A DNA stretch of 64,000 bases from Trichosphaerium sp. ATCC 40318 (lineage: Eukaryota; Protista; Tubulinea), in contig JALMLS010000344.1 in assembly GCA_038496445.1 (NCBI GenBank), positions 310,001 to 374,000 on the forward strand, in the 5' to 3' direction. Of the stretch, positions 13,181 to 53,970 are shown piece after piece. The position numbers and the translations under genes are program-made. The first letter of the stretch is position 1. The number at the start of each line of letters is the position of its first letter. Below the pieces are notes generated by a model. It worked only from the letters and a program-made list of their open reading frames with translations. It searched no databases and was not told the DNA's origin.

Positions 13181-14104
13181 TTAGTTTTTTACATCCTCTA
13201 AAAACTCAGAAGCTGATTTATGAGCCATTTTAATGAAAGGATGGTTTAGTAGATCTTTCGCAAGTGTCCCTCTAACAGAGCAACATCTTGCAAAATCGAG
13301 TACAACTTCATCGCTTGTCAGCGATACCATTGCGTTGCATACCGCTTCGTTGTTGTGCCATAAGTCGGAAACACTTTCTGGTGAGTTTTTATAGCCCTTC
13401 ACGCCATTGATTCCAAAGTCGCGTGCTGTGAGCAGTTCTACTGCGAGCTGTCCGAGTGCGAATGTATCGTCTCTAGTGGAGTATCCCTCTTGTCTAATTT
13501 TGGGATCTACAAAACCCTCTGTTCCGTGCGGTGCGTTCCATTGTGATAGCAAGTCAATATCGTGCCTTTCCATAGCCACTCCGAAGTCTGCGAGTTTAGG
13601 AGTACCACAAGGCATAATCATGACGTTTGCTGCTTTGATATCGTAATGAACAATGCCATTGTCTTGAAGGGCTGAAACGGCGTGAAGCACTCCCTTTGTA
13701 ATGAATGCTGCCGAAGCTTTTGTTAGAGGTTTTGCCATTGCCAGACTGAGTGCATCGCTTGCAGCCAGTGGTAGTATGATGGCTGGGCGCTTTGGCGATG
13801 TTTTTAGCACCTTCGCTGGTTGCATTATGTTTTCACTCTGCGTCTTGCTCTGGAGCTTAGCTTCACGTAGGAGGATCCTTTGGTGTAGTTTGACCTCAGT
13901 TTTGGGAAGGTTATCGCAAACTACTTTCATCGCCATGGTTTTTTGTGTGCGGCTGTTCGTACAAGTATAGACAATGCCACAGGCGCCTTGTCCAAGAATT
14001 TTGCTGTTGTCGATGGCGTACTTTGCTTTAGATCTCTTGCCGTTCTTCTTCTTTTTGAAGACGTCACAGAATGAGTTGAATCGCTGTTTGATTGAGTCGA
14101 GCAT
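13181..14104 (-). CDS. Intronless divergent non-RD Ser/Thr protein kinase
   Basis: Single ORF with LGQGACG, AMK, HYDIKAAN, LADFG, GTEGFVDP, DTFALG, LLNHPF. Confidence 0.9.
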   Translation of the reverse strand: MLDSIKQRFNSFCDVFKKKKNGKRSKAKYAIDNSKILGQGACGIVYTCTNSRTQKTMAMKVVCDNLPKTEVKLHQRILLREAKLQSKTQSENIMQPAKVLKTSPKRPAIILPLAASDALSLAMAKPLTKASAAFITKGVLHAVSALQDNGIVHYDIKAANVMIMPCGTPKLADFGVAMERHDIDLLSQWNAPHGTEGFVDPKIRQEGYSTRDDTFALGQLAVELLTARDFGINGVKGYKNSPESVSDLWHNNEAVCNAMVSLTSDEVVLDFARCCSVRGTLAKDLLNHPFIKMAHKSASEFLEDVKN

Positions 14105-15554
14105 TGGATGAGGTGTTCGGTTCGTTTGAGTAGATGATTTATGTGTTTTTGATACTCGTGTAGTTTTTTTAAGAAAGCATGCTAATGATAGCGCATCCAC
14201 TGGGTAGTTGTATATGCTGGATCAACGCCATTAGCAGTACTTTTTGTACAGGAAGCGCCGCAATATTTAAATTTGGCGCTTTTTCTCTATCTATCTTTTT
14301 CGCCTTTACACGCACCTCCATACGCACTTGTGCATGTACGAAAGTAACTTTCGCTACGTAAATACTACAACACTTCACTATACTTAAAACAGACCTTAAA
14401 ATACCGTTTAGCTTTGTGCTGTAGTACAAGGAGTGATATGTGAGTTTTTCTCAGAGTGACAGTACATCGTACAAACGTTCTATTAATTCCAATAACTTGC
14501 CCTACGCGCAGAGAGTACATAGCGTAGTTTTTAGTCGTATTTCATTGCGTAGTGAGAATACACATTAATAGCTTTTTCAAGGAGTTTTGTAGCGTTTAAC
14601 GGGATGCACCATTGTTTCTAGACTGAATGCTTACATCGTTGTACTAAGAATCGCATAGATTAGAATTTTCGGGCAACACTTGCCAAAAAACAGAAAAGTA
14701 GAAGGTGAAATAAAAATAAAATTGATAAAAAGAAATATCGTTCGAAAACAAAATTAATCGCTTACACCCACTTTTTAGATTCTAAAACCTTTCCAATGCT
14801 GTTCTCACACTCGCAAATAACTACCACAATTGGTTTTTAACGTTTTGAAATGTGCATTATCCATTTTTTGAGTTGTACCGTAGATATTTCGGTGAAGAGT
14901 AGTTGCGATGTAGATGTAACCCACCTCCTTTTTTTCTGAAGCGAGCCATTTGATGTATGAAACTTGTCGATTGATCACTTGAGTTTTCGAGCATCCAACG
15001 TTACGCGGGTAAATCCATTTGAAAATTTAAAAAACCTCCAATGAAGCTTTGAAGCATCACTGACGCTACAACACGCTCTTGTTTTAAAATATAGAACCGA
15101 ATCTGGAGGTTTAAGCTTGAAAAAGTCGGTTGGTTCCATGATCACGTTTTAACAGCCGAAATTGGATCAATCGGTTCACCAGTGGACCGACGCATCATAC
15201 CTGTTACGTTTGTTAATGTTGGCGTTGTGTTGCTCCTCAAAAGTTACGTTGTGGACAATAATCAGCAGTGTTGTTCGCTGAGTGGTTAGCTACCTGTTTA
15301 CGGAATAGTAGAATAGTAGGGCACGAAACTGGTGCTAACACTTCTGTTTCCATGGCTGATCGTGCTTGGGTAACGTATGTACCTTTGTCGAACCGTCATA
15401 TCGATTACAGCGATATGTTAGTTATTACAAAGAGTACCTTCCACTCGTTTTTTTTGGTTGACTTTTACTTACTTGGCTGTTTTGGGTGCTATTACTCCAT
15501 AAAAAGGCGAAAAAATCAGTTATATTACCTTTACACACGAAGTACACCATCAAG

Positions 15555-17229
15555 ATGTCCAAGTTATTTTCTTCTCTTGCCAGCTTTACAAAGACTATCT
15601 TCGGCAGCGACAAGAAGTCCATAACCACCTCTAAAACTACAGTACGCCTTACTAAACCACTACCATCCTAGTTTTAAAACGTTTCCTGGCTTTCTAGCCC
15701 GTTTCCTAATTCCGAAACGAATGGAGTAAAATACAGACTTTTTATTTTTAGGGAATTTCATTTTTATCTAGCCTTTAGTAACGTATTTTGCTTTTACTCA
15801 CTGTTTCTTTAGACTTGTGACAACTTTACGACATTTTCTCCATCGGAGAATTCGGTGACGCCGTTAACTACTTCATTACCTAAAGTATGTTCTTACTTCT
15901 GAATTTTTTTTTGTTTGTTTTTGGCTTTATTGTCGTTGTTCAGTCACTAACTCATTCTTTTAGAAATCCAAGGTACTAAAAAGGACTGCAAAGAAACCTA
16001 GAAGGTCTCTTAGGACCCATACTTTCCCTGCAGAACCAATGGTGAAAACAGCGGAGTACAAAAAACGCTGTTTTCTTGTTGGTGAAATTCTTGCAACAGA
16101 AAAGAATTATGTAAATAATCTACGAAAACTACAAACAGTACGTCCTGATCTGAGTTTTGTGACTTTTCTCATTATCAATTTCTTTTACTCACACTTGTGT
16201 TAGGTTTCAAGACCTGCCGCTCTCATGCTTACACCTGATGAGCATGCATCTGTTTTTTGTGGGTTTGAGTCTCTCATTGATCACCACACTGCTTTCTATC
16301 GCTCTCTCAGAAGGCGTGTTGCAAAGTGGGGCCCAGAGCGAATTGCTGGTGCTTTTCTGAAAGCAGATTTTCTCTCGGAGTACATTAAGTACAATGAGAG
16401 CCACAAAACTGCGACTCAGTCATTAATTTATCTCAAACATAAATATTCGAGATTCAGAATATTAATCGATAAATTTAATGCCACAGCACAACTCGAGGAG
16501 CAACCTGATATCCTCAGTTACATTATAACACCAGTACAGCGCTTATTCAAGGTATGCAACCCATCTTTTTATAACCTCGTTTTTCTTTCTTCCTATTATA
16601 GTAGAGTTTTATTAATCTCATCTTAGTACATGCTCCTTATCAAAGAATTACTTGGAAAAACTTGTGCTCTTTCAACAGAACACAAGAAGCTTTCTCAAGC
16701 CTCTGATATGCTCAACAACATCCTTCTGGAGAGCAATGAGGGCATGAAGAGCAAGGAAGAGAAACTTGATCAACAGAATACTCTGTTGCAAGTTGCCTCT
16801 TCCATGAAAGGCACATTTCTGTATAAGAACGGACGTAGGATTATCTACAGTTCTAGTTTGAGTGCCAGAAAGAACGCACTGCAGAGACGAAAACACACCC
16901 CACATGGATTTTTATTTAATGACATATTTGTCATTGCTGAGGAGTCTCATACATCGAATGATGGTAATGAGACAAGTCAGTATAATTTCATGTGTTCGGT
17001 GGTGTTGAAAGAAGCTCTGCGTGTTAGTAAAACCAAACCTAAACAGTTTAAAATACACCTTGGCAGTTGCTCAGTCAAAGTCAATGTGCAGAAGAAAGAA
17101 GATTGTAAAAAGTGGGTTACACTCTTACAAAGAGCAATCCTTGACATCCAGGGTAATGTGTCTGCGCCATTGAGGTCTGAGAAAACATTACAAAAACCTG
17201 TACCGCAATTTACTACGGAATTGCTGTAA
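15555..17229 (+). CDS. RhoGEF (DH-PH domain protein)
   Basis: EILATEKNYVNNL, YIITPVQRLFKYMLLIKELL, PH motifs HGFLFNDIFVI and KKWVTLL. Confidence 0.92.
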
Positions 17230-18888: not shown

Positions 18889-20408
18889 TTAGTTGCACAC
18901 AGATGCAATGAGGTTGACACCGTTGGCGTTTGTGACACAATCTTGGTTGGCTTGGCTTGTGACAGCGCTTTTGGCAGCAGTAGTGGAACTGTATGTGGAA
19001 GCTCCAACAATGACGGCGGATACACCAGCAACGTGTGGGGAGGCCATGGAAGTACCAGAGAGTGTGGAGTAAGCGGAGTCGCTTGTACCGGTAGAAGAGT
19101 AGATGCTGGTACCAGGAGCAATGATGTTAGTGCAACTACCGTAGTTGGAGAAAGTAGATCTTCTTTGGTTGATGTCAGAAGCGACAGTTGTAAAGGCACC
19201 AGTGGCGCGAGCAGGGGAGTAACTGCAAGCATCACGGTTATCGTTACCGGCAGCAACAACCATCAAGAGACCAGCGCTGTTAGCGTTGTTGACAGCATTG
19301 TCGAGAGCGGAAGAGGCACCACCACCGAGGGACATGCTGCAAGTAAAAGTCAGTAAAAAAAAAACCAACAAAAATCCAAAAAGAATATGACATACTTGGC
19401 GGTACTCTTGCAACCTCTGGAAGAACCACAGTGGACACCGTTGGATTGAGCATCGCTAGCAGCGAAGTCAACACCACCGACAACACCAGAAGTGGAACCA
19501 GATCCAGTTCTACTCAAGACCTAAAACGATGGTAAGTTGCAAGTAGTGAAGGCTTATTATTAAAATAACTCGTACCTTAACATCGACGATTGTACCACTG
19601 CGGGCAATACCGACAGTGTTACCACCAACAGTACCAGCAACGTGAGTTCCGTGACCGTTACCATCAGAGCAAGCGCTCTCACCGCTGATGAAAGAACGAC
19701 CAGCAACAGCGCGACCGCCTGAGAATTCGTTGTGGCTGCATCTTACACCAGTATCAAGAATGTAGCTGTGGGAAAGAAGATAAGAAAATTATCTAAGTAT
19801 TGTGAAAGCTGTGCGTACTTTCTTGTTCCGGCACCAGGGCTGGATGGCAAAGAGTATTGGGATGGTACTGCTCCACAAGATGTGGCAGATACACGTTGGA
19901 GACCCCATGATCTTGGTGTAGCTTGGTTGCTGTTGCAAGAAGGCATAGCGTGCATAACACCATCTTCTTCAATAAGAGCGATTGTGTGGTCCATTTGGCG
20001 AAGTTCTTCGACAGTCCTAAGAGTGTAAAGTGAGTAATTTAGTTGTCTCAAAAAAAGGGCCAACTTACTCTTTGCTCAATCTTGCGGCAAAACCGTTGAT
20101 GATGTCCCATTCGGCGGTGATTTCGTTGACTGGATCAGCTGTGAGGATTTTGTTTTTGAGTGTGGCGCCTGTACGTAGATTAGCAATGTAAAAGGATCTG
20201 TTTTACGTACGAGCACGTGAGTGACGGCTGGCAGTGCCCTCATGGAGCATGATGATGTACGAACCACGTACGACCTCTCTGTGTGTTTCGAGAGGTACCA
20301 AGGCTATAGAATACAGGTTAGCCTTTCGTAAGAAAAGTTACGCGAGTGGAAGAGCATACCCAAAGTTGTGGCGGCCAAAAGGGCTAGACAAATGAGAAGA
20401 GTATTCAT
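18889..20408 (-). CDS. Secreted subtilisin S8A serine protease (aqualysin/proteinase K-like) with I9 propeptide
   Basis: Signal peptide; SWGLQRV; catalytic [33 protein letters not shown]. Confidence 0.95.
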
Positions 20409-36317: not shown

Positions 36318-39300
36318 TTATTTAGTGTACTCAAGAAGCCTACCCCTTACCTTTTCCAGCCACCCTTTCGCAAAAAAAATGAGTAAAAGCCAAATAAATG
36401 GTGCAAGAAAGAAAAAAGAATGTACCGGAAAGAAAGTCTTTAGATATTGAAGAACGTTTCCATGTTTTTTCATAAGAGTTCATTGTCTTTTTAAAATTTC
36501 TTGCTTCTTGAACAAGACCATCAGCGTCATTCTTGTAGTTCTCGAAATGAGAAACAAGCTTATCTAAGGCAACGCTTATAGGGCTATAATCGGTTGAAGC
36601 ATCATTTTCAGTGAAGTTCTTCAAACACTTCTTAATTGTATCGACGACTTGATCGAATCTCACTTTATCGAATTGACCTGGTTGTTGCTTCTTACAAATT
36701 TGTTTTTGTTGATTATATAACCATCCAATACACTAAAAATAAGTAATTCATTTAGTATCAGCCCAAGATGACAACATTAAACTAAAAGAAATAGACGAGG
36801 CTCGAAAACTAGGTATTTTTATAAAAATAAAGAGGATATTTGTCCACTTTGACTTTGTTTGGAAAACAAGCAGCTAGGAGCAGTATGTTGTAAAAACTTA
36901 ACAGTTGTATAAAATATGAATACCAATGAAGAAGAATCAAATAGAAATTGGAAGGTCACGTAGAAATGGGGCGAAAAAACCACCACACCATTCAGTGTTC
37001 ACCGTACTTGTAATAACAATCTAGGTGAGAAAAAGAGATGTCTATTTTCTCTAAGTTCTTGCCATGTAGGGTCTTCATAAACAACGAATCCTTCATCACT
37101 AAACAATGTATCTAAAGTAACGTATGCATCACCTAACATAAAGGTTAACTCAACACTTAAAAACATATGTGGAAACTCTTTGGACTTAATCAGCCTTAAC
37201 CCAATACTGGGTCTCAAAGTCACAGATATGCTTCAAACCATATCCCGTGTGATGAAGGGCGTAGGTAATAATAATTTCATCAACAAATCAAGCGTACCTT
37301 TAATTAAACCTGAACAAAACTTAGAACATTCGTAGATGTTAAAAGTGCAATCCCATTTTTTTCCAGAATTCTTTTCAGTAATTAAAGGCTTCGGTGTTGT
37401 ACTGAAAGATAACAAAGACTAAAAGAAAATACTGTAAGCATGCGACACAAGAGTAGTAAGTAAAAAATGACTAATCTTACCTTTAGACTTGGCGTATAGA
37501 CAGCAACATAATATGGTTTACCATCAGGTGTTTTGCTTGCACCAAGAAATAAAATATTATCATCTTTTTGTAGGACTTCCCAAGGAAATCCTACAACTTC
37601 TGATATACTTTTCTGTTTTGATATCTGTTCTTTAAGTAATAAAGTCTCTAAAATAAAATTGATAAGCAACACGAACTCAAGTTTGATCGCTTGGCTGAAC
37701 GCTTTCGCATTTTGACTAAAAAAGATTTTAAAAGTTTGGACTTTTTTCTTTCTCGATTTGGTCTAGAAACATCGAACACAATGATCAGGTTTAGTATCTT
37801 ACCACAGTGCTTTGATGAAACAAAAATTATAGGTGTAAATGCGTACTTGTTGGTTTAAATGAATCAACAGTCTGGCGTATTGAGAATAACCAATCTTCTA
37901 AGAATAAAACATGTTCTTCATGTAACTTGTCAGGCAAATCACAACTCTTTAACTCTTCTTCTATTTCCTTCTTAAATTCCTCGTGCTTCGTTTTAAGTTC
38001 TTCATGAGTAAATTTCCCTAAATGAACGTTAAGAACACTAGTGTCAACAAATCTGTATGCACCTGCTCTAATTTCTAGTAAAAACTTGCGATCTTGACTG
38101 TAATCGCCTGTTTCGTTAAACCACGTGCTGAATGATGGTGACATAGCTAACAGTGTTAATAAACTGAAGAAGGTTTGAAACACTGTACCTCTCTTAGCTA
38201 AGAAAAGAATTCTAAACATTATATACCTATGATTGTGGTTAAACCGCAAAAGTGCAGGGAAACTAAAGAATTTTGTTTATTTGTGTACCATCTCTTGTTT
38301 AGATTTTTTAATACTTCAGTTGCATCACTTTTATTTTCAATAGTACGAAGTGCTTTGAAGGATGTGAGTGTTTGGATAGTAAAATACATAGAAGGTGAGA
38401 ATATACCTGATTTGTTTAGTCTTTCAACCTTTCTCAGTCCTTTTGAGCCATGTATTTCACTCATGTACTTCTCGACAATTTGTTTGGTCATGAATTTTTT
38501 ACGATTACTGTATTGTAGTAAGTATTAGAAAAGTGAAAGATGACAAGTATTGTTGAAACACAATCAACGTACTTTTTAAGCTGTTGCCATTCAGTTGATT
38601 CGGCTACAGTTGCTTTAGGCATACTGTAAAGCATTTCGATGGTTCTGGCATCACCTTTAATGAGGAGTTGTAAGAACGACTCAATACCCTGGAAAACACC
38701 ATTAAATCTAAAATCTTCTCTATTGAATTTTTATGGAACACGAAAAAACTTACGTGGACTGTATAGTCAATGACGGCATCTGGGAGGTTTTTTCTGATTT
38801 GTTTAACTTCATCAATGGCTAGTATTTCTTTTACAGGGAAAAGTATAACTGCCTTTAGACAAAGAAAAAAATTAGCGAAGACATTTTGTTTTTTATTTTT
38901 TTGACAGGTGTCAAAATGAAATGTCATTTCTCTTACCAGAATATCAATATCAGATGTTGGAACTTCAAGATTATACGCTTTTGATCCATAAAAGCAACCA
39001 AATAAAACTTTTCCAAGTTTTGATGCAATATCTAGGAAAGTACTTCCTACAAGCGCAGGATCATCAATTTTTTTTTGAGTGAAAGAAAATGTATCGACTT
39101 TAGGTTTTTCCCTATTTCTCGTTAATACAAAAAAGACATACGCCAATTTTGGGTTTTTACCTGAATACATTACGCTCTTTTTTTGCTATCCTTTCTTTTT
39201 CTTGTTCTTCTAGTATATCAGCTTCTTTATGCATTAAACTACATAGTTTCTTTCCACAGTCAATGTCTATTTCATCACAATTGTGAGAGTTATTAACACA

Positions 39301-39906
39301 TTCTTTCTTTACGGGATGAATGAGATCTCTACAAATAAAGAAGCTTAGAAATGATAGTCAAACCATCACCAACTATACTCACTTTGTTTTAGTAAACGGT
39401 AGATGTCTTTGTCTTGGTATAACGAATTCCCACTGTACTTTAAACTTAAAAAACCCTTCATGCTCTGAGGGAGACGTTTTTGTTTCCATAAAGCCGTATG
39501 CTTGCCAACTAAGAGATATTTAAGTTAAATTATACTTGTTGGATGTCATACGCACCCTTGAGATCGCGCAACAGACGCAATCAAGCAAAGACGTTTAGAT
39601 GTCTATGATTATTATCCAAAAAGCACTCAAATCACTTTAACGTACTTTTGTGCATTCATCGAACGCTCCATCAAGTACCTCGCGTGGTTGCGGCGACTTT
39701 TTACGCGTTGGAACCTATTTAACAGTTAACACTGACTAGGCCTATTAATAGTACGTACGGCCCATGTTTTAGTAGCGATAGCCTGATTTAAATTGTCCCA
39801 ACTCTTTTTACCTGTTAGTACAACACAAATGGCGTACAAACCGTACACTCGTCTTCAGTACTACGAAAGCACCGCAATTATCGAGTTTTGTAGCTGTGGC
39901 AGCCAT
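36318..39906 (-). CDS. YTH domain + YcgL/RlaP-type (Nuc-transf) nucleotidyltransferase + second degenerate nucleotidyltransferase domain
   Basis: Hand-spliced N-terminus aligns with YTH (FVVLKTSSWDNL..KTWA, LIASVARSQGWQAYGFM, FKVQW..LPFTKT..HP, CDEIDIDCGKKLC) and continues in frame into YGSKAYNLEVPTSDIDI..LLIKGD..FLLEIRAG..LPD..WLFSIR; the downstream copy has IYECSKFCSGLIKG, WQELRENR, GWLEKVR. Confidence 0.8.
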
Positions 39907-52482: not shown

Positions 52483-53970
52483 ATGGAAGGCGCTTCTAAA
52501 TTAACTGGCACAACGCGTGGCCTGTATGATGTACCACCAGAAATACTATGTGTCATTTTGAAAAATCTCGAAATAGATCGATACGCTGCCGCTCAAACTT
52601 GCTCTAAATTCGCTAATATCATTCACAATATAATCGGATACGTTAGTCTAGTAATAACAAGACCAATGGACACATTACAAATAGAAAAGTACCCAGGCGT
52701 TCTAAAAAACACTGAAATCATAGGTAGACGCGGAGGAAACATGTTTAATGATACAAGCGTTAACGCAATAACAAACGAGTTTATAGCGCGACTTGCTGGA
52801 GCACAAAACATACGTCTGGCTTACTGCACATGTATAAATGATGCGTGCGTAAAGGCTCTAGCTGGTATACATACCCTTGATATCAGAGGATGCTATAAAG
52901 TAACCAATGAAGGCATAAAAGCTCTAAAAGGTATTTTTGTTTTGAAATCTTAAACACGTGGCTTGTTATCGGCTTTTGGAGTGTTGAAAGGAATATGAAA
53001 AAATCTCCTGCTACTCTCTTATGTGGGTCGTTAACGAGATTCTCATGTTCTTTCTTTTTTGACATCATTCAAAGCCTAACTTTGAAATCGAACTTAAGCT
53101 TTTGTATACTAACTAACATGTTTAATATCTTTAACTAACTTATATGTTTAAGGTATTTACTCTGTTAGATTACCTCATATTGTTTCAGATGAGGGTTTAA
53201 AGGGACTAACTGGTGTACATATACTTGATATAAAAGCTCCTTACAGTTCAAATGATAAAGTAACAGACGAAGGTATGAAAGCAGTTAAAGGAGTTCACTA
53301 TATTGATATTACAAATTGTGGTGTAACAGATAAAGGTATAGCAGAGCTTTCTGGGGTTCATACTATAATACTTGAGAAATGCAAAGGTGTTACTAACGAA
53401 GGATTAAAATTCTTAAAGGGAGTTCATTCTGCGAATATAAATAAATGTAGTCAAATAACAAATGAAGGCATCAAGGCCTTGTCTGGTGTTCATTACCTAA
53501 CTTTGAAGGATTGTTATAAAGTCGATGATGTAAGTGCGCTGAAGGGTATACATACGATCAATTTACATGGGACTTATGTTGATGATAAGTGCATGAAGTC
53601 TTTGGCTGGAGTTCATAAAATAAGTGTTAGAGGTTGTAATGTTACAGATATTGGTATTGTACACCTTGCTGGAGTTCAATCTATTGATGTCAGTTATACA
53701 ACAGTCACAAATGAAGGTATAAAAGCGCTTCGAGGAGTAAAGGTTATATTTCTTTGGGGACATAGAGAAATGAGTGATGATTGTTTAAAGTCACTTGAAG
53801 GTGTTAAGTATATTTCACTTCGTCATTGTCATCATGTTACTACCAAGGGTATACTAGCAATTAATAGTCTAACAAGATTAGCAAAAGAAGATTGTCCTAG
53901 TATTTCTATTCAAGAATTAATGGATAGTGGCATAAAAGCTTCAGCCTTCCTCAATGAGTTTAGGTTTTGA
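52483..53970 (+). CDS. F-box + cysteine-containing LRR protein (GVHTI/GIHTL repeats); one intron at 52931-53152
   Basis: F-box LYDVPPEILCVILKNL..AQTCSKF; many ~22-aa repeats of the form L.GVH.I.I..C..VT..GI. Confidence 0.9.

What the first reader, a model, noticed from the sequence alone, without database searches (positions are those of the whole stretch)
36318..39906. YTH RNA-reader domain fused to tandem RlaP/YcgL-type nucleotidyltransferase domains: candidate reader-coupled RNA tailing/repair enzyme
Seen: five small exons (39906 to ~39160), absent from the ORF track, splice by GT-AG into MAATATKLDNCGAFVVLKTSSWDNLNQAIATKTWAVPTRKKSPQPREVLDGAFDECTKTSKRLCLIASVARSQGWQAYGFMETKTSPSEHEGFFKFKVQWEFVIPRQRHLPFTKTKDLIHPVKKECVNNSHNCDEIDIDCGKKLCSLM. 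The frame continues through a charged linker into YGSKAYNLEVPTSDID. Established: this matches YTH hallmark blocks (YTHDC1, from memory: FFLIKS, GVWST, LIFSVRESGKFQGFARL, FKIDW..LPFTK, QEIELECGTQLC). GS-x-AY..SD-x-D is the Pol-beta-superfamily signature of the YcgL/Nuc-transf (RlaP) family, mostly bacterial/phage and linked to RNA-repair gene neighbourhoods. Inference: a eukaryotic RNA-recognition module has been joined to a prokaryote-type nucleotidyltransferase, so the protein may select RNAs (methylated or motif-bearing) and modify their ends. I know of no described protein with this architecture.
Basis: partly seen in the sequence, partly recalled or inferred. Interest (0 to 1): 0.9.

Follow-up and report, generated by a model that had tools for sequence, protein, structure and literature searches.

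The report
YTH-like domain fused to RlaP nucleotidyltransferases
A 16-exon gene of an unidentified microbial eukaryote most likely joins a divergent YTH-type RNA-binding domain to a phage/bacterial-type RNA-repair nucleotidyltransferase (RlaP) and a dead copy of it, an unreported combination that could aim RNA 3'-end nucleotide addition at chosen RNAs, although no transcript yet proves the join.

Summary
A 49-nt intron continues the frame into the GS...DxD exon. The full model has 16 exons and 756 aa, ending at 36318.

- **NTase part:** well supported as RlaP (PF10127). Exons 7, 9 and 14 each hit phage RlaP genes. The spliced protein scores 53.6 bits against a phage-RlaP profile (best shuffle 9.7); hhalign probability is 96.8%. 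Copy 1 keeps GS and all three Asp. Copy 2 has lost both DxD Asp and is probably inactive.
- **YTH part:** supported modestly. It scores 18.4 bits, colinear over the whole domain, against a Pfam-verified YTH profile (best of 22,000 shuffles 12.7). The native exon order is the best of 720. Only one m6A-cage Trp is clearly kept, so m6A reading is doubtful.
- **Fusion:** inferred, not shown. RNA contigs confirm only introns 8 and 9.

Pfam and AlphaFold could not be run on the spliced protein, and architecture databases could not be queried. An unchecked first-stage note reports a tandem-RlaP gene elsewhere in this genome, with no YTH domain mentioned in its title. Verdict: a probable new domain architecture of known parts, function untested.

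The parts
39847..39906 (-). Exon 1 (aa 1-20). The first ATG is at 39906-39904, with an in-frame stop 10 codons upstream.
39759..39803 (-). Exon 2 (aa 21-35). Holds W34 (39764-39762), aligned with the first cage Trp of DF-type YTH.
39646..39714 (-). Exon 3 (aa 36-58).
39556..39602 (-). Exon 4 (aa 59-74).
39383..39508 (-). Exon 5 (aa 75-116). Contains FKVQW...LPFTK and the shortened cage loop.
39161..39328 (-). Exon 6 (aa 117-172). Holds the last YTH-like strands (its sole Pfam hit is YTH, profile positions 109-135 of 135), then a Lys/Glu-rich linker.
39226..39870 (-). YTH-like domain as a whole (aa 13-150), spread over exons 1-6.
   Evidence: Local DF-type YTH HMM scores 18.4 bits against at most 12.7 in 22,000 shuffles. 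hhalign gives E 1e-4, probability 58%, against at most 1.7% for shuffles. Exon-order test.
39112..39160 (-). Intron 6, the YTH/NTase junction. It is 49 nt, GT-AG, with a TTAAC branch-like motif. No RNA evidence covers it.
38937..39111 (-). Exon 7 (aa 173-230). Carries G214-S215, D226 (38951-38949) and D228 (38945-38943).
   Evidence: tblastn hits the phage ABPH49 RlaP. HMM alignment.
38754..38852 (-). Exon 8 (aa 231-263). Carries the third catalytic Asp, D259 (38768-38766).
   Evidence: The exon 8/9 junction is confirmed by a spliced RNA contig.
38573..38688 (-). Exon 9 (aa 264-302). RlaP-specific helical segment (LLIKGDARTIEMLY).
   Evidence: tblastn hits phage RlaP genes. Both flanking introns are confirmed by the RNA contig.
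38289..38507 (-). Exon 10 (aa 303-375). May hold a further in-frame 54-nt intron at 38406-38353; this is unresolved.
37847..38226 (-). Exon 11 (aa 376-501). C-terminal helical half of RlaP copy 1.
   Evidence: hhalign covers RlaP copy 1 end to end. It is transcribed. No relative was found among 1.84 billion representatives.
37866..39032 (-). RlaP copy 1 as a whole (aa ~199-495), catalytically intact.
37648..37846 (-). Intron 11 (199 nt, predicted). One RNA contig reads 6 nt into it unspliced; unspliced, the frame stops at TAA 37829-37827.
37481..37647 (-). Exon 12 (aa 502-557). Degenerate motif GAS...K545/Y547 (37543-37508) in place of GS...DxD.
37298..37418 (-). Exon 13 (aa 558-598). D580 is aligned with the third Asp.
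37008..37132 (-). Exon 14 (aa 599-639). Second copy of the RlaP-specific segment.
36426..36732 (-). Exon 15 (aa 640-742).
36318..36364 (-). Exon 16 (aa 743-756) and stop codon TAA 36320-36318.
36351..37567 (-). RlaP copy 2 as a whole (aa ~529-746), degenerate and probably inactive.
   Evidence: hhalign probability 77%, E 2e-5. Copy 1 against copy 2: 35.8 bits.

Best explanation
One spliced nuclear gene (39906-36318, minus strand, 16 exons) encodes a protein of about 756 aa with four parts. (1) A divergent YTH-like (PUA-type) nucleic-acid-binding domain, aa 13-150. (2) A Lys/Glu-rich linker. (3) A catalytically intact RlaP (PF10127) Pol-beta-type nucleotidyltransferase, aa ~199-495, with G214-S215, D226, D228 and D259. 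(4) A second RlaP-like module, aa ~529-746, whose two metal-binding aspartates are replaced by K545 and Y547.

Shown here: the exons, the open frame, the RlaP homology of both modules, the intact versus degenerate active sites, modest but significant YTH homology, and transcription with splicing of introns 8 and 9.

Inferred: bacterial RlaP adds one or two NMPs to RNA 3'-OH ends and does not act on DNA. By analogy, copy 1 adds a few nucleotides to RNA 3' ends. The YTH-like domain tethers the enzyme to particular RNAs, through a modified base or a sequence/structure motif; canonical m6A reading is doubtful. The dead copy serves as scaffold or extra RNA-binding surface, as inactive repeats do in tandem NTases such as OAS2/3 (from general knowledge).
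For: **Gene model.** All 15 introns are GT-AG and the frame is one uninterrupted 756-codon reading frame.

**RNA.** A spliced contig joins 38813-38753 / 38687-38573 / 38507-38490 exactly at the predicted boundaries.

**RlaP.**
- Exon 7 hits the Acinetobacter phage ABPH49 NTase, which is PF10127 at 6e-17.
- Exon 9 hits phage NTases, including the Erythrobacter phage gene that is PF10127 at 1.6e-16.
- Exon 14 hits a split phage RlaP.
- blastp of the spliced model against the phage RlaP gives 47 bits over aa 205-371 and 31.6 bits over aa 585-651.
- An HMM of 120 phage RlaPs scores 53.6 bits against at most 9.7 in 1,000 shuffles, and aligns GS, DxD and the third Asp.
- hhalign gives 96.8% for copy 1 end to end and 77% for copy 2.

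**YTH.**
- The only Pfam family hit by exon 6 is YTH, at the profile's C-terminal end.
- An HMM was built from the 42 distinct YTH-domain ORFs taken from 120 motif-matched metagenome loci; six of the ORFs were checked and score 160-176 bits on PF04146. It scores the spliced N-terminus at 18.4 bits, colinear aa 13-150, against at most 12.7 in 22,000 shuffles.
- hhalign gives E 1e-4, and controls score at most 1.7%.
- The native exon order scores best of 720.

**Fusion.**
- Intron 6 has the size and TTAAC motif of its neighbours.
- Exon 7 has no in-frame Met. The only upstream ATG in its frame lies inside exon 6.
- Neighbouring genes are 1.5-3 kb away, so overlapping genes would be unusual here.

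**RlaP chemistry.** bioRxiv 10.64898/2025.12.29.696909.
Against: - No RNA contig covers exons 1-7 or the junction.
- Read unspliced, exon 6 ends at a TAA formed by the donor, so a YTH-only protein is formally possible.
- An unchecked first-stage note reports a tandem-RlaP gene elsewhere in the genome with no YTH domain named in its title, so the NTase pair may be able to stand alone.
- One RNA contig reads through the exon-11 donor. Some transcripts may therefore encode only YTH plus copy 1.
- YTH support is modest (hhalign 58%). It rests on a DF-type-only profile, and single exons stay below Pfam's cut-off.
- The loop with the second and third m6A-cage residues is shortened.
- Pfam on single exons names only generic NTP_transf_2, below its cut-off.
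- Exon 11 has no relatives in 1.84 billion protein representatives, so there is no comparative support for the architecture.
Confidence: 0.6

Rival explanations
1. There are two adjacent genes: a small YTH-only gene (exons 1-6, stop at the TAA 39159-39157 that the unspliced intron-6 donor creates) and a separate tandem-RlaP gene starting at ATG 39170.
For: The unspliced frame stops right at the intron-6 donor. The exon-7 frame is open back to an ATG at 39170. A first-stage note describes a tandem-RlaP gene elsewhere in the genome with no YTH named in its title. No RNA spans the junction.
Against: The two coding regions would overlap by about 14 nt, while other genes in the window are kilobases apart. 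The alternative N-terminus is translated from T-rich, intron-like sequence. Intron 6 matches the size, ends and TTAAC motif of the five introns before it. A stop straight after a phase-2 GTA/GTG donor is also seen at intron 5 and soon after at intron 4, so it does not discriminate.
Confidence: 0.17
2. The gene is fused as modelled, but the N-terminal domain is not a modified-base reader. It would be a degenerate YTH/PUA-like barrel used for plain RNA binding (as in Mmi1) or protein contacts, or it may be unrelated to YTH.
For: Only W34 of the canonical cage is conserved and the cage loop is about 7 residues shorter. hhalign probability is only 58%. Pfam exon hits are below the cut-off.
Against: The colinear whole-domain match beats 22,000 shuffles and every other exon order. 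YTH is the only Pfam family reported for exon 6. F94 aligns with the second cage Trp, so a partial cage may survive.
Confidence: 0.35
3. The NTase does not act on RNA 3' ends but on another acceptor (a small molecule, a protein or DNA), as other Pol-beta-fold families do.
For: Pfam and the language-model atlas see only a generic Pol-beta NTase core in exons 7-8. No assay exists for any eukaryotic RlaP.
Against: Similarity extends through the RlaP-specific segment and the helical domain. The two characterised RlaPs act on RNA only, not DNA. Fusion to an RNA-binding-type domain fits an RNA substrate.
Confidence: 0.1
4. It is a decaying pseudogene or a mis-spliced chance frame.
For: No orthologues were found. 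RNA coverage is very low.
Against: The frame stays open for 756 codons across 16 exons in DNA of 35% GC. The catalytic residues are intact. Spliced RNA exists, and the one RNA/DNA difference is synonymous.
Confidence: 0.04

Closest known systems
RlaP (PF10127) nucleotidyltransferases: Pseudomonas PfRlaP/PaRlaP, phage T4 NrdC.11, Acinetobacter phage ABPH49 AXN57819.1
   Same: Copy 1 has GS, DxD and the third Asp. [quoted passage not shown] The expected chemistry is addition of 1-2 NMP to RNA 3'-OH.
   Different: The known members are single-domain prokaryotic or phage proteins, often encoded next to RNA ligase genes. This one is an intron-rich eukaryotic gene, duplicated in tandem with one dead copy and carrying an N-terminal YTH-like domain. 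Identity to the phage RlaPs is only about 25%.
YTH-domain proteins (YTHDF/YTHDC m6A readers; Mmi1 as a YTH protein that does not read m6A, from general knowledge)
   Same: Colinear similarity over the whole ~135-residue domain, with the first cage Trp conserved.
   Different: The loop bearing YTHDF2 W486/W491 (cage residues per PMC8016981 and PMC9466600) is shortened. The score is below Pfam's cut-off at the exon level. No known YTH protein carries an NTase, as far as the literature held here shows.
Prokaryotic PUA-like sensor-effector fusions (EVE-HNH VcaM4I, PMC7897488; EVE/YTH-like domains with McrBC, PMC7641849 and PMC11090510)
   Same: The logic is the same: a modified-base or nucleic-acid-sensing barrel fused to an enzyme that acts on the bound nucleic acid.
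   Different: The effectors there are nucleases or GTPases, not nucleotidyltransferases. The EVE/DCD census (PMC7641849) contains no mention of nucleotidyltransferase, RlaP or RNA repair.
Tandem NTases with inactive repeats (OAS2/OAS3; from general knowledge)
   Same: One polypeptide with repeated Pol-beta-type modules, only one of which is catalytic.
   Different: It is a different NTase family. There the active copy is C-terminal; here it is the first copy.

Membership tests
RlaP (PF10127) | Profile-level similarity to verified PF10127 members beyond the generic NTase core | tested here: met
   A phage-RlaP HMM scores 53.6 bits against at most 9.7 in shuffles. hhalign gives 96.8% and E 2.4e-10 over aa 199-495. 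Exons 7, 9 and 14 hit phage genes, three of which were confirmed as PF10127.
RlaP (PF10127) | Score above Pfam's own gathering cut-off (23 bits) on the protein | not testable with these tools
   The spliced protein has no reference and could not be submitted. Single exons gave only NTP_transf_2 at 15-18 bits.
RlaP (PF10127) | GS motif and three conserved catalytic aspartates (copy 1) | tested here: met
   G214-S215, D226, D228 and D259 align with the family's residues.
RlaP (PF10127) | GS motif and three conserved catalytic aspartates (copy 2) | tested here: not met
   K545 and Y547 align with the DxD aspartates. Only D580 (third Asp) is kept. Copy 2 is therefore a degenerate relative, not an active member.
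RlaP (PF10127) | C-terminal helical domain closing a cleft with the NTase domain | tested here: inconclusive
   hhalign aligns exon 11 to the phage proteins' C-terminal region, but no structure could be predicted.
RlaP (PF10127) | Adds 1-2 NMP to RNA 3'-OH; association with RNA ligases | not testable with these tools
   This needs biochemistry. First-stage notes list many RNA ligase genes elsewhere in the genome, all unchecked.
YTH domain (PF04146) | Profile similarity over the whole domain | tested here: met
   An HMM built from metagenome YTH ORFs, a sample of which was verified against PF04146, scores 18.4 bits, colinear aa 13-150, p < 5e-5 by shuffles. hhalign gives E 1e-4 with clean controls. 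Exon-order test. The support is modest.
YTH domain (PF04146) | Score above Pfam's gathering cut-off (22.1 bits) | tested here: inconclusive
   Only single exons could be scanned. Exon 6 scores 14.4-15.9 bits at profile positions 109-135; the other exons give nothing.
YTH domain (PF04146) | YTH/PUA-like beta-barrel fold | not testable with these tools
   Structure prediction accepts only unspliced window translations.
m6A-reading YTH proteins | Three-residue aromatic cage (YTHDF2 W432, W486, W491) | tested here: inconclusive
   W34 aligns with W432. F94 may align with W486. The W491 position falls in a 7-residue deletion. The alignment is uncertain in that loop.

The most novel reading that the evidence does not exclude
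The protein may be a reader-guided 'fill-in' enzyme. The YTH-like domain would recognise a marked or broken RNA, and the RlaP domain would add one or two nucleotides at the 3' end before religation. That would make it one component of an expanded cut-fill-ligate RNA repair or insertional-editing toolkit. Unchecked first-stage notes suggest such a toolkit for this genome: many Rnl1/Rnl2/RtcB ligase fusions, and mitochondrial cryptogenes needing single-base insertions. The N-terminus shows no obvious organellar presequence, so any link to mitochondrial editing is speculative.
Probability: 0.1. Interest if true: 0.85.

Novelty: new variant of a known kind. Interest (0 to 1): 0.55.

Why it matters
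RlaP is a barely studied RNA-repair enzyme family, almost entirely bacterial and viral. Its first biochemistry appeared only in late 2025. A eukaryotic, intron-rich, expressed version welded to a YTH-like RNA-binding domain would be the first case of a YTH-type module directly coupled to an enzyme that extends RNA 3' ends. It would give a testable model for how template-independent 1-2 nt addition can be aimed at particular RNAs. It also adds to signs, unchecked here, that this organism has domesticated many phage/bacterial RNA-repair enzymes.

Tried and rejected
- **Pfam, PDB-sequence and atlas searches on single exons** gave only sub-threshold or no signal. The spliced protein has no reference, so Pfam, HHpred-like searches, AlphaFold and Foldseek on it were left out rather than typing a long sequence.
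- **phmmer of exon 11** against 1.84 billion representatives found no relative; the one hit was a repetitive, coiled-coil-like protein.
- **Word-indexed search with exons 7-8** found nothing.
- **Metagenome scan with exon 6 peptides** found nothing; exon 5 was too short for the tool.
- **tblastn of the YTH exons against plasmids** gave only noise.
- **A relaxed YTH motif scan** found no match in viral contigs. It gave 25 chance-level matches in prokaryotic genomes, none YTH by the local HMM. The YTH profile therefore stayed DF-type only.
- **RNA data:** only one run holds the locus, at very low depth, and it does not cover the junction.
- **Other searches:** no paralogue in the window; no Rfam family in the window; the Burroughs and Aravind 2016 paper that named RlaP is not held; the phage RlaP has no sequence relative in the PDB.
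- **Rejected gene models:**
  - A hidden exon in the 275-nt intron 14: the profile alignment runs straight across the exon 14/15 junction.
  - The CAG acceptor 3 nt after the TACTAAC of intron 1: it gives an immediate stop.
  - A separate gene for copy 2: there is no Met in the exon-12 frame.
Full report
**Observation**

I read the region on the minus strand and spliced the exons in a script.

A further 49-nt GT-AG intron (39160-39112) keeps the frame into an exon carrying YGSKAY...TSDID. Continuing in the same way gives 16 exons and one open frame of 756 codons ending at TAA 36320-36318. All 15 introns are GT-AG, and most have a YTAAY-like motif 9-25 nt before the AG, intron 6 included. An in-frame stop lies 10 codons upstream of the ATG at 39906.

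**RNA evidence**

Only one public run holds the locus, at very low depth and as assembled contigs.
- One contig is spliced exactly at my introns 8 and 9 (38753-38689 and 38572-38508). The NTase part is therefore transcribed and processed as modelled.
- Its single difference from the window (38611) is a synonymous third-position change.
- A second contig (37841-38006) runs 6 nt past the predicted exon-11 donor. Read unspliced, the frame stops at 37829-37827, so this is pre-mRNA or an intron-retention isoform lacking the second NTase copy.
- Nothing covers exons 1-7, so the YTH/NTase junction has no transcript support.

**The nucleotidyltransferase**

Single exons are too short for Pfam. Exon 7 gives only the generic NTP_transf_2 family below its cut-off, and the protein atlas likewise sees a generic Pol-beta NTase core. 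Three exons nonetheless hit phage genes on their own by tblastn.
- Exon 7 hits the 'putative nucleotidyltransferase' of Acinetobacter phage ABPH49. Pfam assigns that gene to RlaP, PF10127, at 6e-17.
- Exon 9 hits phage NTases, including an Erythrobacter phage gene that is PF10127 at 1.6e-16.
- Exon 14 hits a Klebsiella phage gene that is the downstream half of a split RlaP.

The spliced model was then tested as a whole.
- It aligns with the ABPH49 protein over aa 205-371 (47 bits) and again over aa 585-651 (31.6 bits).
- A profile built from 120 phage RlaPs scores it at 53.6 bits, against at most 9.7 for 1,000 shuffles.
- That profile aligns G214-S215, D226, D228 and D259 with the family's GS, DxD and third Asp.
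- hhalign covers copy 1 end to end (aa 199-495 against 3-355 of 358; probability 96.8%, E 2.4e-10). It matches copy 2 at 77%.
- The two copies also match each other at 35.8 bits.
- In copy 2 the DxD aspartates are replaced by K545 and Y547, and only the third Asp (D580) remains.

The gene therefore encodes one intact RlaP module followed by one degenerate module. 'Tandem NTase domains' is right in form, but there is only one active site.

**The YTH-like domain**

At the exon level the only signal is exon 6, which hits Pfam YTH (E 0.011-0.032, 14-16 bits, cut-off 22.1). It is the sole family reported, and the hit lies at the C-terminal end of the profile where it belongs.

To test the spliced domain I needed YTH sequences supplied by a tool. 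A degenerate DNA pattern for the DF-type motif NKPVTNSRDTQE returned 120 metagenome loci. Forty-six have an uninterrupted ORF across the domain. Six that I checked are PF04146 at 160-176 bits over the whole profile.

A profile of 42 distinct domains gave these results.
- The spliced N-terminus scores 18.4 bits, aligned colinearly from aa 13 to 150 against profile positions 10-145.
- The best of 22,000 composition-matched shuffles scores 12.7.
- hhalign gives E 1e-4 and probability 58%. Shuffles reach at most 1.7%, the reversed sequence 0.1%, and the RlaP alignment as a wrong target 0.4%.
- Of all 720 orders of the six exon peptides, the native order scores highest.
- No single six-frame fragment of the window rises above noise, so the signal appears only after correct splicing.

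I read this as real but distant YTH homology, with the caveat that my profile contains only DF-type YTH domains.

The m6A cage of YTHDF2 is W432, W486 and W491 (PMC8016981, PMC9466600). W34 aligns with the first. F94 possibly aligns with the second. The third falls in a 7-residue deletion. Canonical m6A reading is therefore doubtful.

**One gene or two?**

Arguments for one gene:
- Intron 6 looks like its neighbours in length, ends and branch-like motif.
- Exon 7 has no in-frame Met before the catalytic motif.
- The only ATG in that frame (39170) lies inside exon 6, so a separate NTase gene would overlap the YTH coding region. The nearest other genes are about 1.6 kb and 3 kb away.
- An alternative AG 6 nt upstream is also in frame.

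Arguments against:
- There is no spanning RNA.
- The unspliced exon-6 frame stops at the donor, although this is common for phase-2 GTA/GTG donors in this gene.
- An unchecked first-stage note reports a tandem-RlaP gene elsewhere in the genome with no YTH named in its title.

I put the fusion at roughly 0.8.

**Likely mechanism**

Pseudomonas RlaPs add one or two NMPs (or dNMPs) to the 3'-OH of RNA. They prefer broken tRNA-like substrates, do not act on DNA, need three conserved aspartates and work best with Mn2+ (bioRxiv 10.64898/2025.12.29.696909). Copy 1 keeps those residues, so the inferred activity is short 3'-end nucleotide addition on RNA.

The YTH-like domain, on a ~40-residue charged linker, would supply substrate selection or tethering. 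The dead copy would act as scaffold or extra RNA surface. All of this is inference from homology; none of it was tested.

**Comparison and novelty**

The parts are known; the combination is not, as far as I could check.
- The census of EVE/YTH-type domain contexts (PMC7641849) does not mention nucleotidyltransferases, RlaP or RNA repair.
- PF10127 appears in only three held papers.
- The RlaP preprint notes only 'a small number' of eukaryotic members.
- No protein among 1.84 billion representatives resembles exon 11, so close orthologues are unsampled.

I could not query InterPro-type architecture tables, so 'new' is provisional. I class it as a new variant (domain architecture) of known kinds.

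Unchecked first-stage notes describe many RNA-ligase fusions and insertional mitochondrial RNA editing in the same genome. These make a role in a broader cut-fill-ligate RNA toolkit conceivable, but the N-terminus shows no presequence and I give that reading about 0.1.

**Limits**

The spliced protein has no reference, so Pfam, structure prediction and fold search on it were left out. The possible 54-nt in-frame intron in exon 10 and the use of the 199-nt intron 11 remain unresolved. The organism was not identified.

Noticed in passing
window 37827-38006: An RNA contig reads unspliced 6 nt past the exon-11 donor. Unspliced, the frame ends at TAA 37829-37827, which would give a ~510-aa isoform (YTH-like plus active RlaP, without the dead copy). 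It could also simply be pre-mRNA.
   Followed up: partly
window 38353-38406: A 54-nt in-frame GT...AG stretch inside exon 10 has intron-like composition (G 6%) and encodes a hydrophobic, T-rich peptide. It may be a sixteenth intron.
   Followed up: partly
window 38611: The RNA contig differs from the window by T>A on the + strand. This is the third position of an Ala codon in exon 9, so it is synonymous. It is an allele or strain difference between the RNA sample and the assembly.
   Followed up: yes
window 37690-37710: Inside intron 11, an ATG opens a short basic peptide (MRKRSAKRS...) that stops at the intron's acceptor. It is probably meaningless, but it is the only Met between the two RlaP copies.
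   Followed up: no
L149:958-1914 (Klebsiella phage vB_KpM_FBKp34): This phage's RlaP gene is split into a 64-aa CDS (PF10127 positions 19-54) and a 253-aa CDS annotated 'putative thioredoxin'. This looks like a frameshift or a mis-annotation.
   Followed up: partly
window 13184-14200, 16630-17226, 18892-19413, 53275-53967: Ordinary eukaryotic neighbours: a protein kinase, a PH-like domain, a subtilase fragment and an LRR protein. No RNA-ligase or methyltransferase gene was seen among the large ORFs of the window.
   Followed up: partly
same genome, other windows (first-stage notes): Unchecked notes list a tandem-RlaP paralogue, Rnl1/Rnl2/RtcB ligase fusions, mitochondrial cryptogenes needing single-base insertions and an MTA1c-type 6mA system. 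If real, they place this gene in a large RNA-repair repertoire.
   Followed up: no
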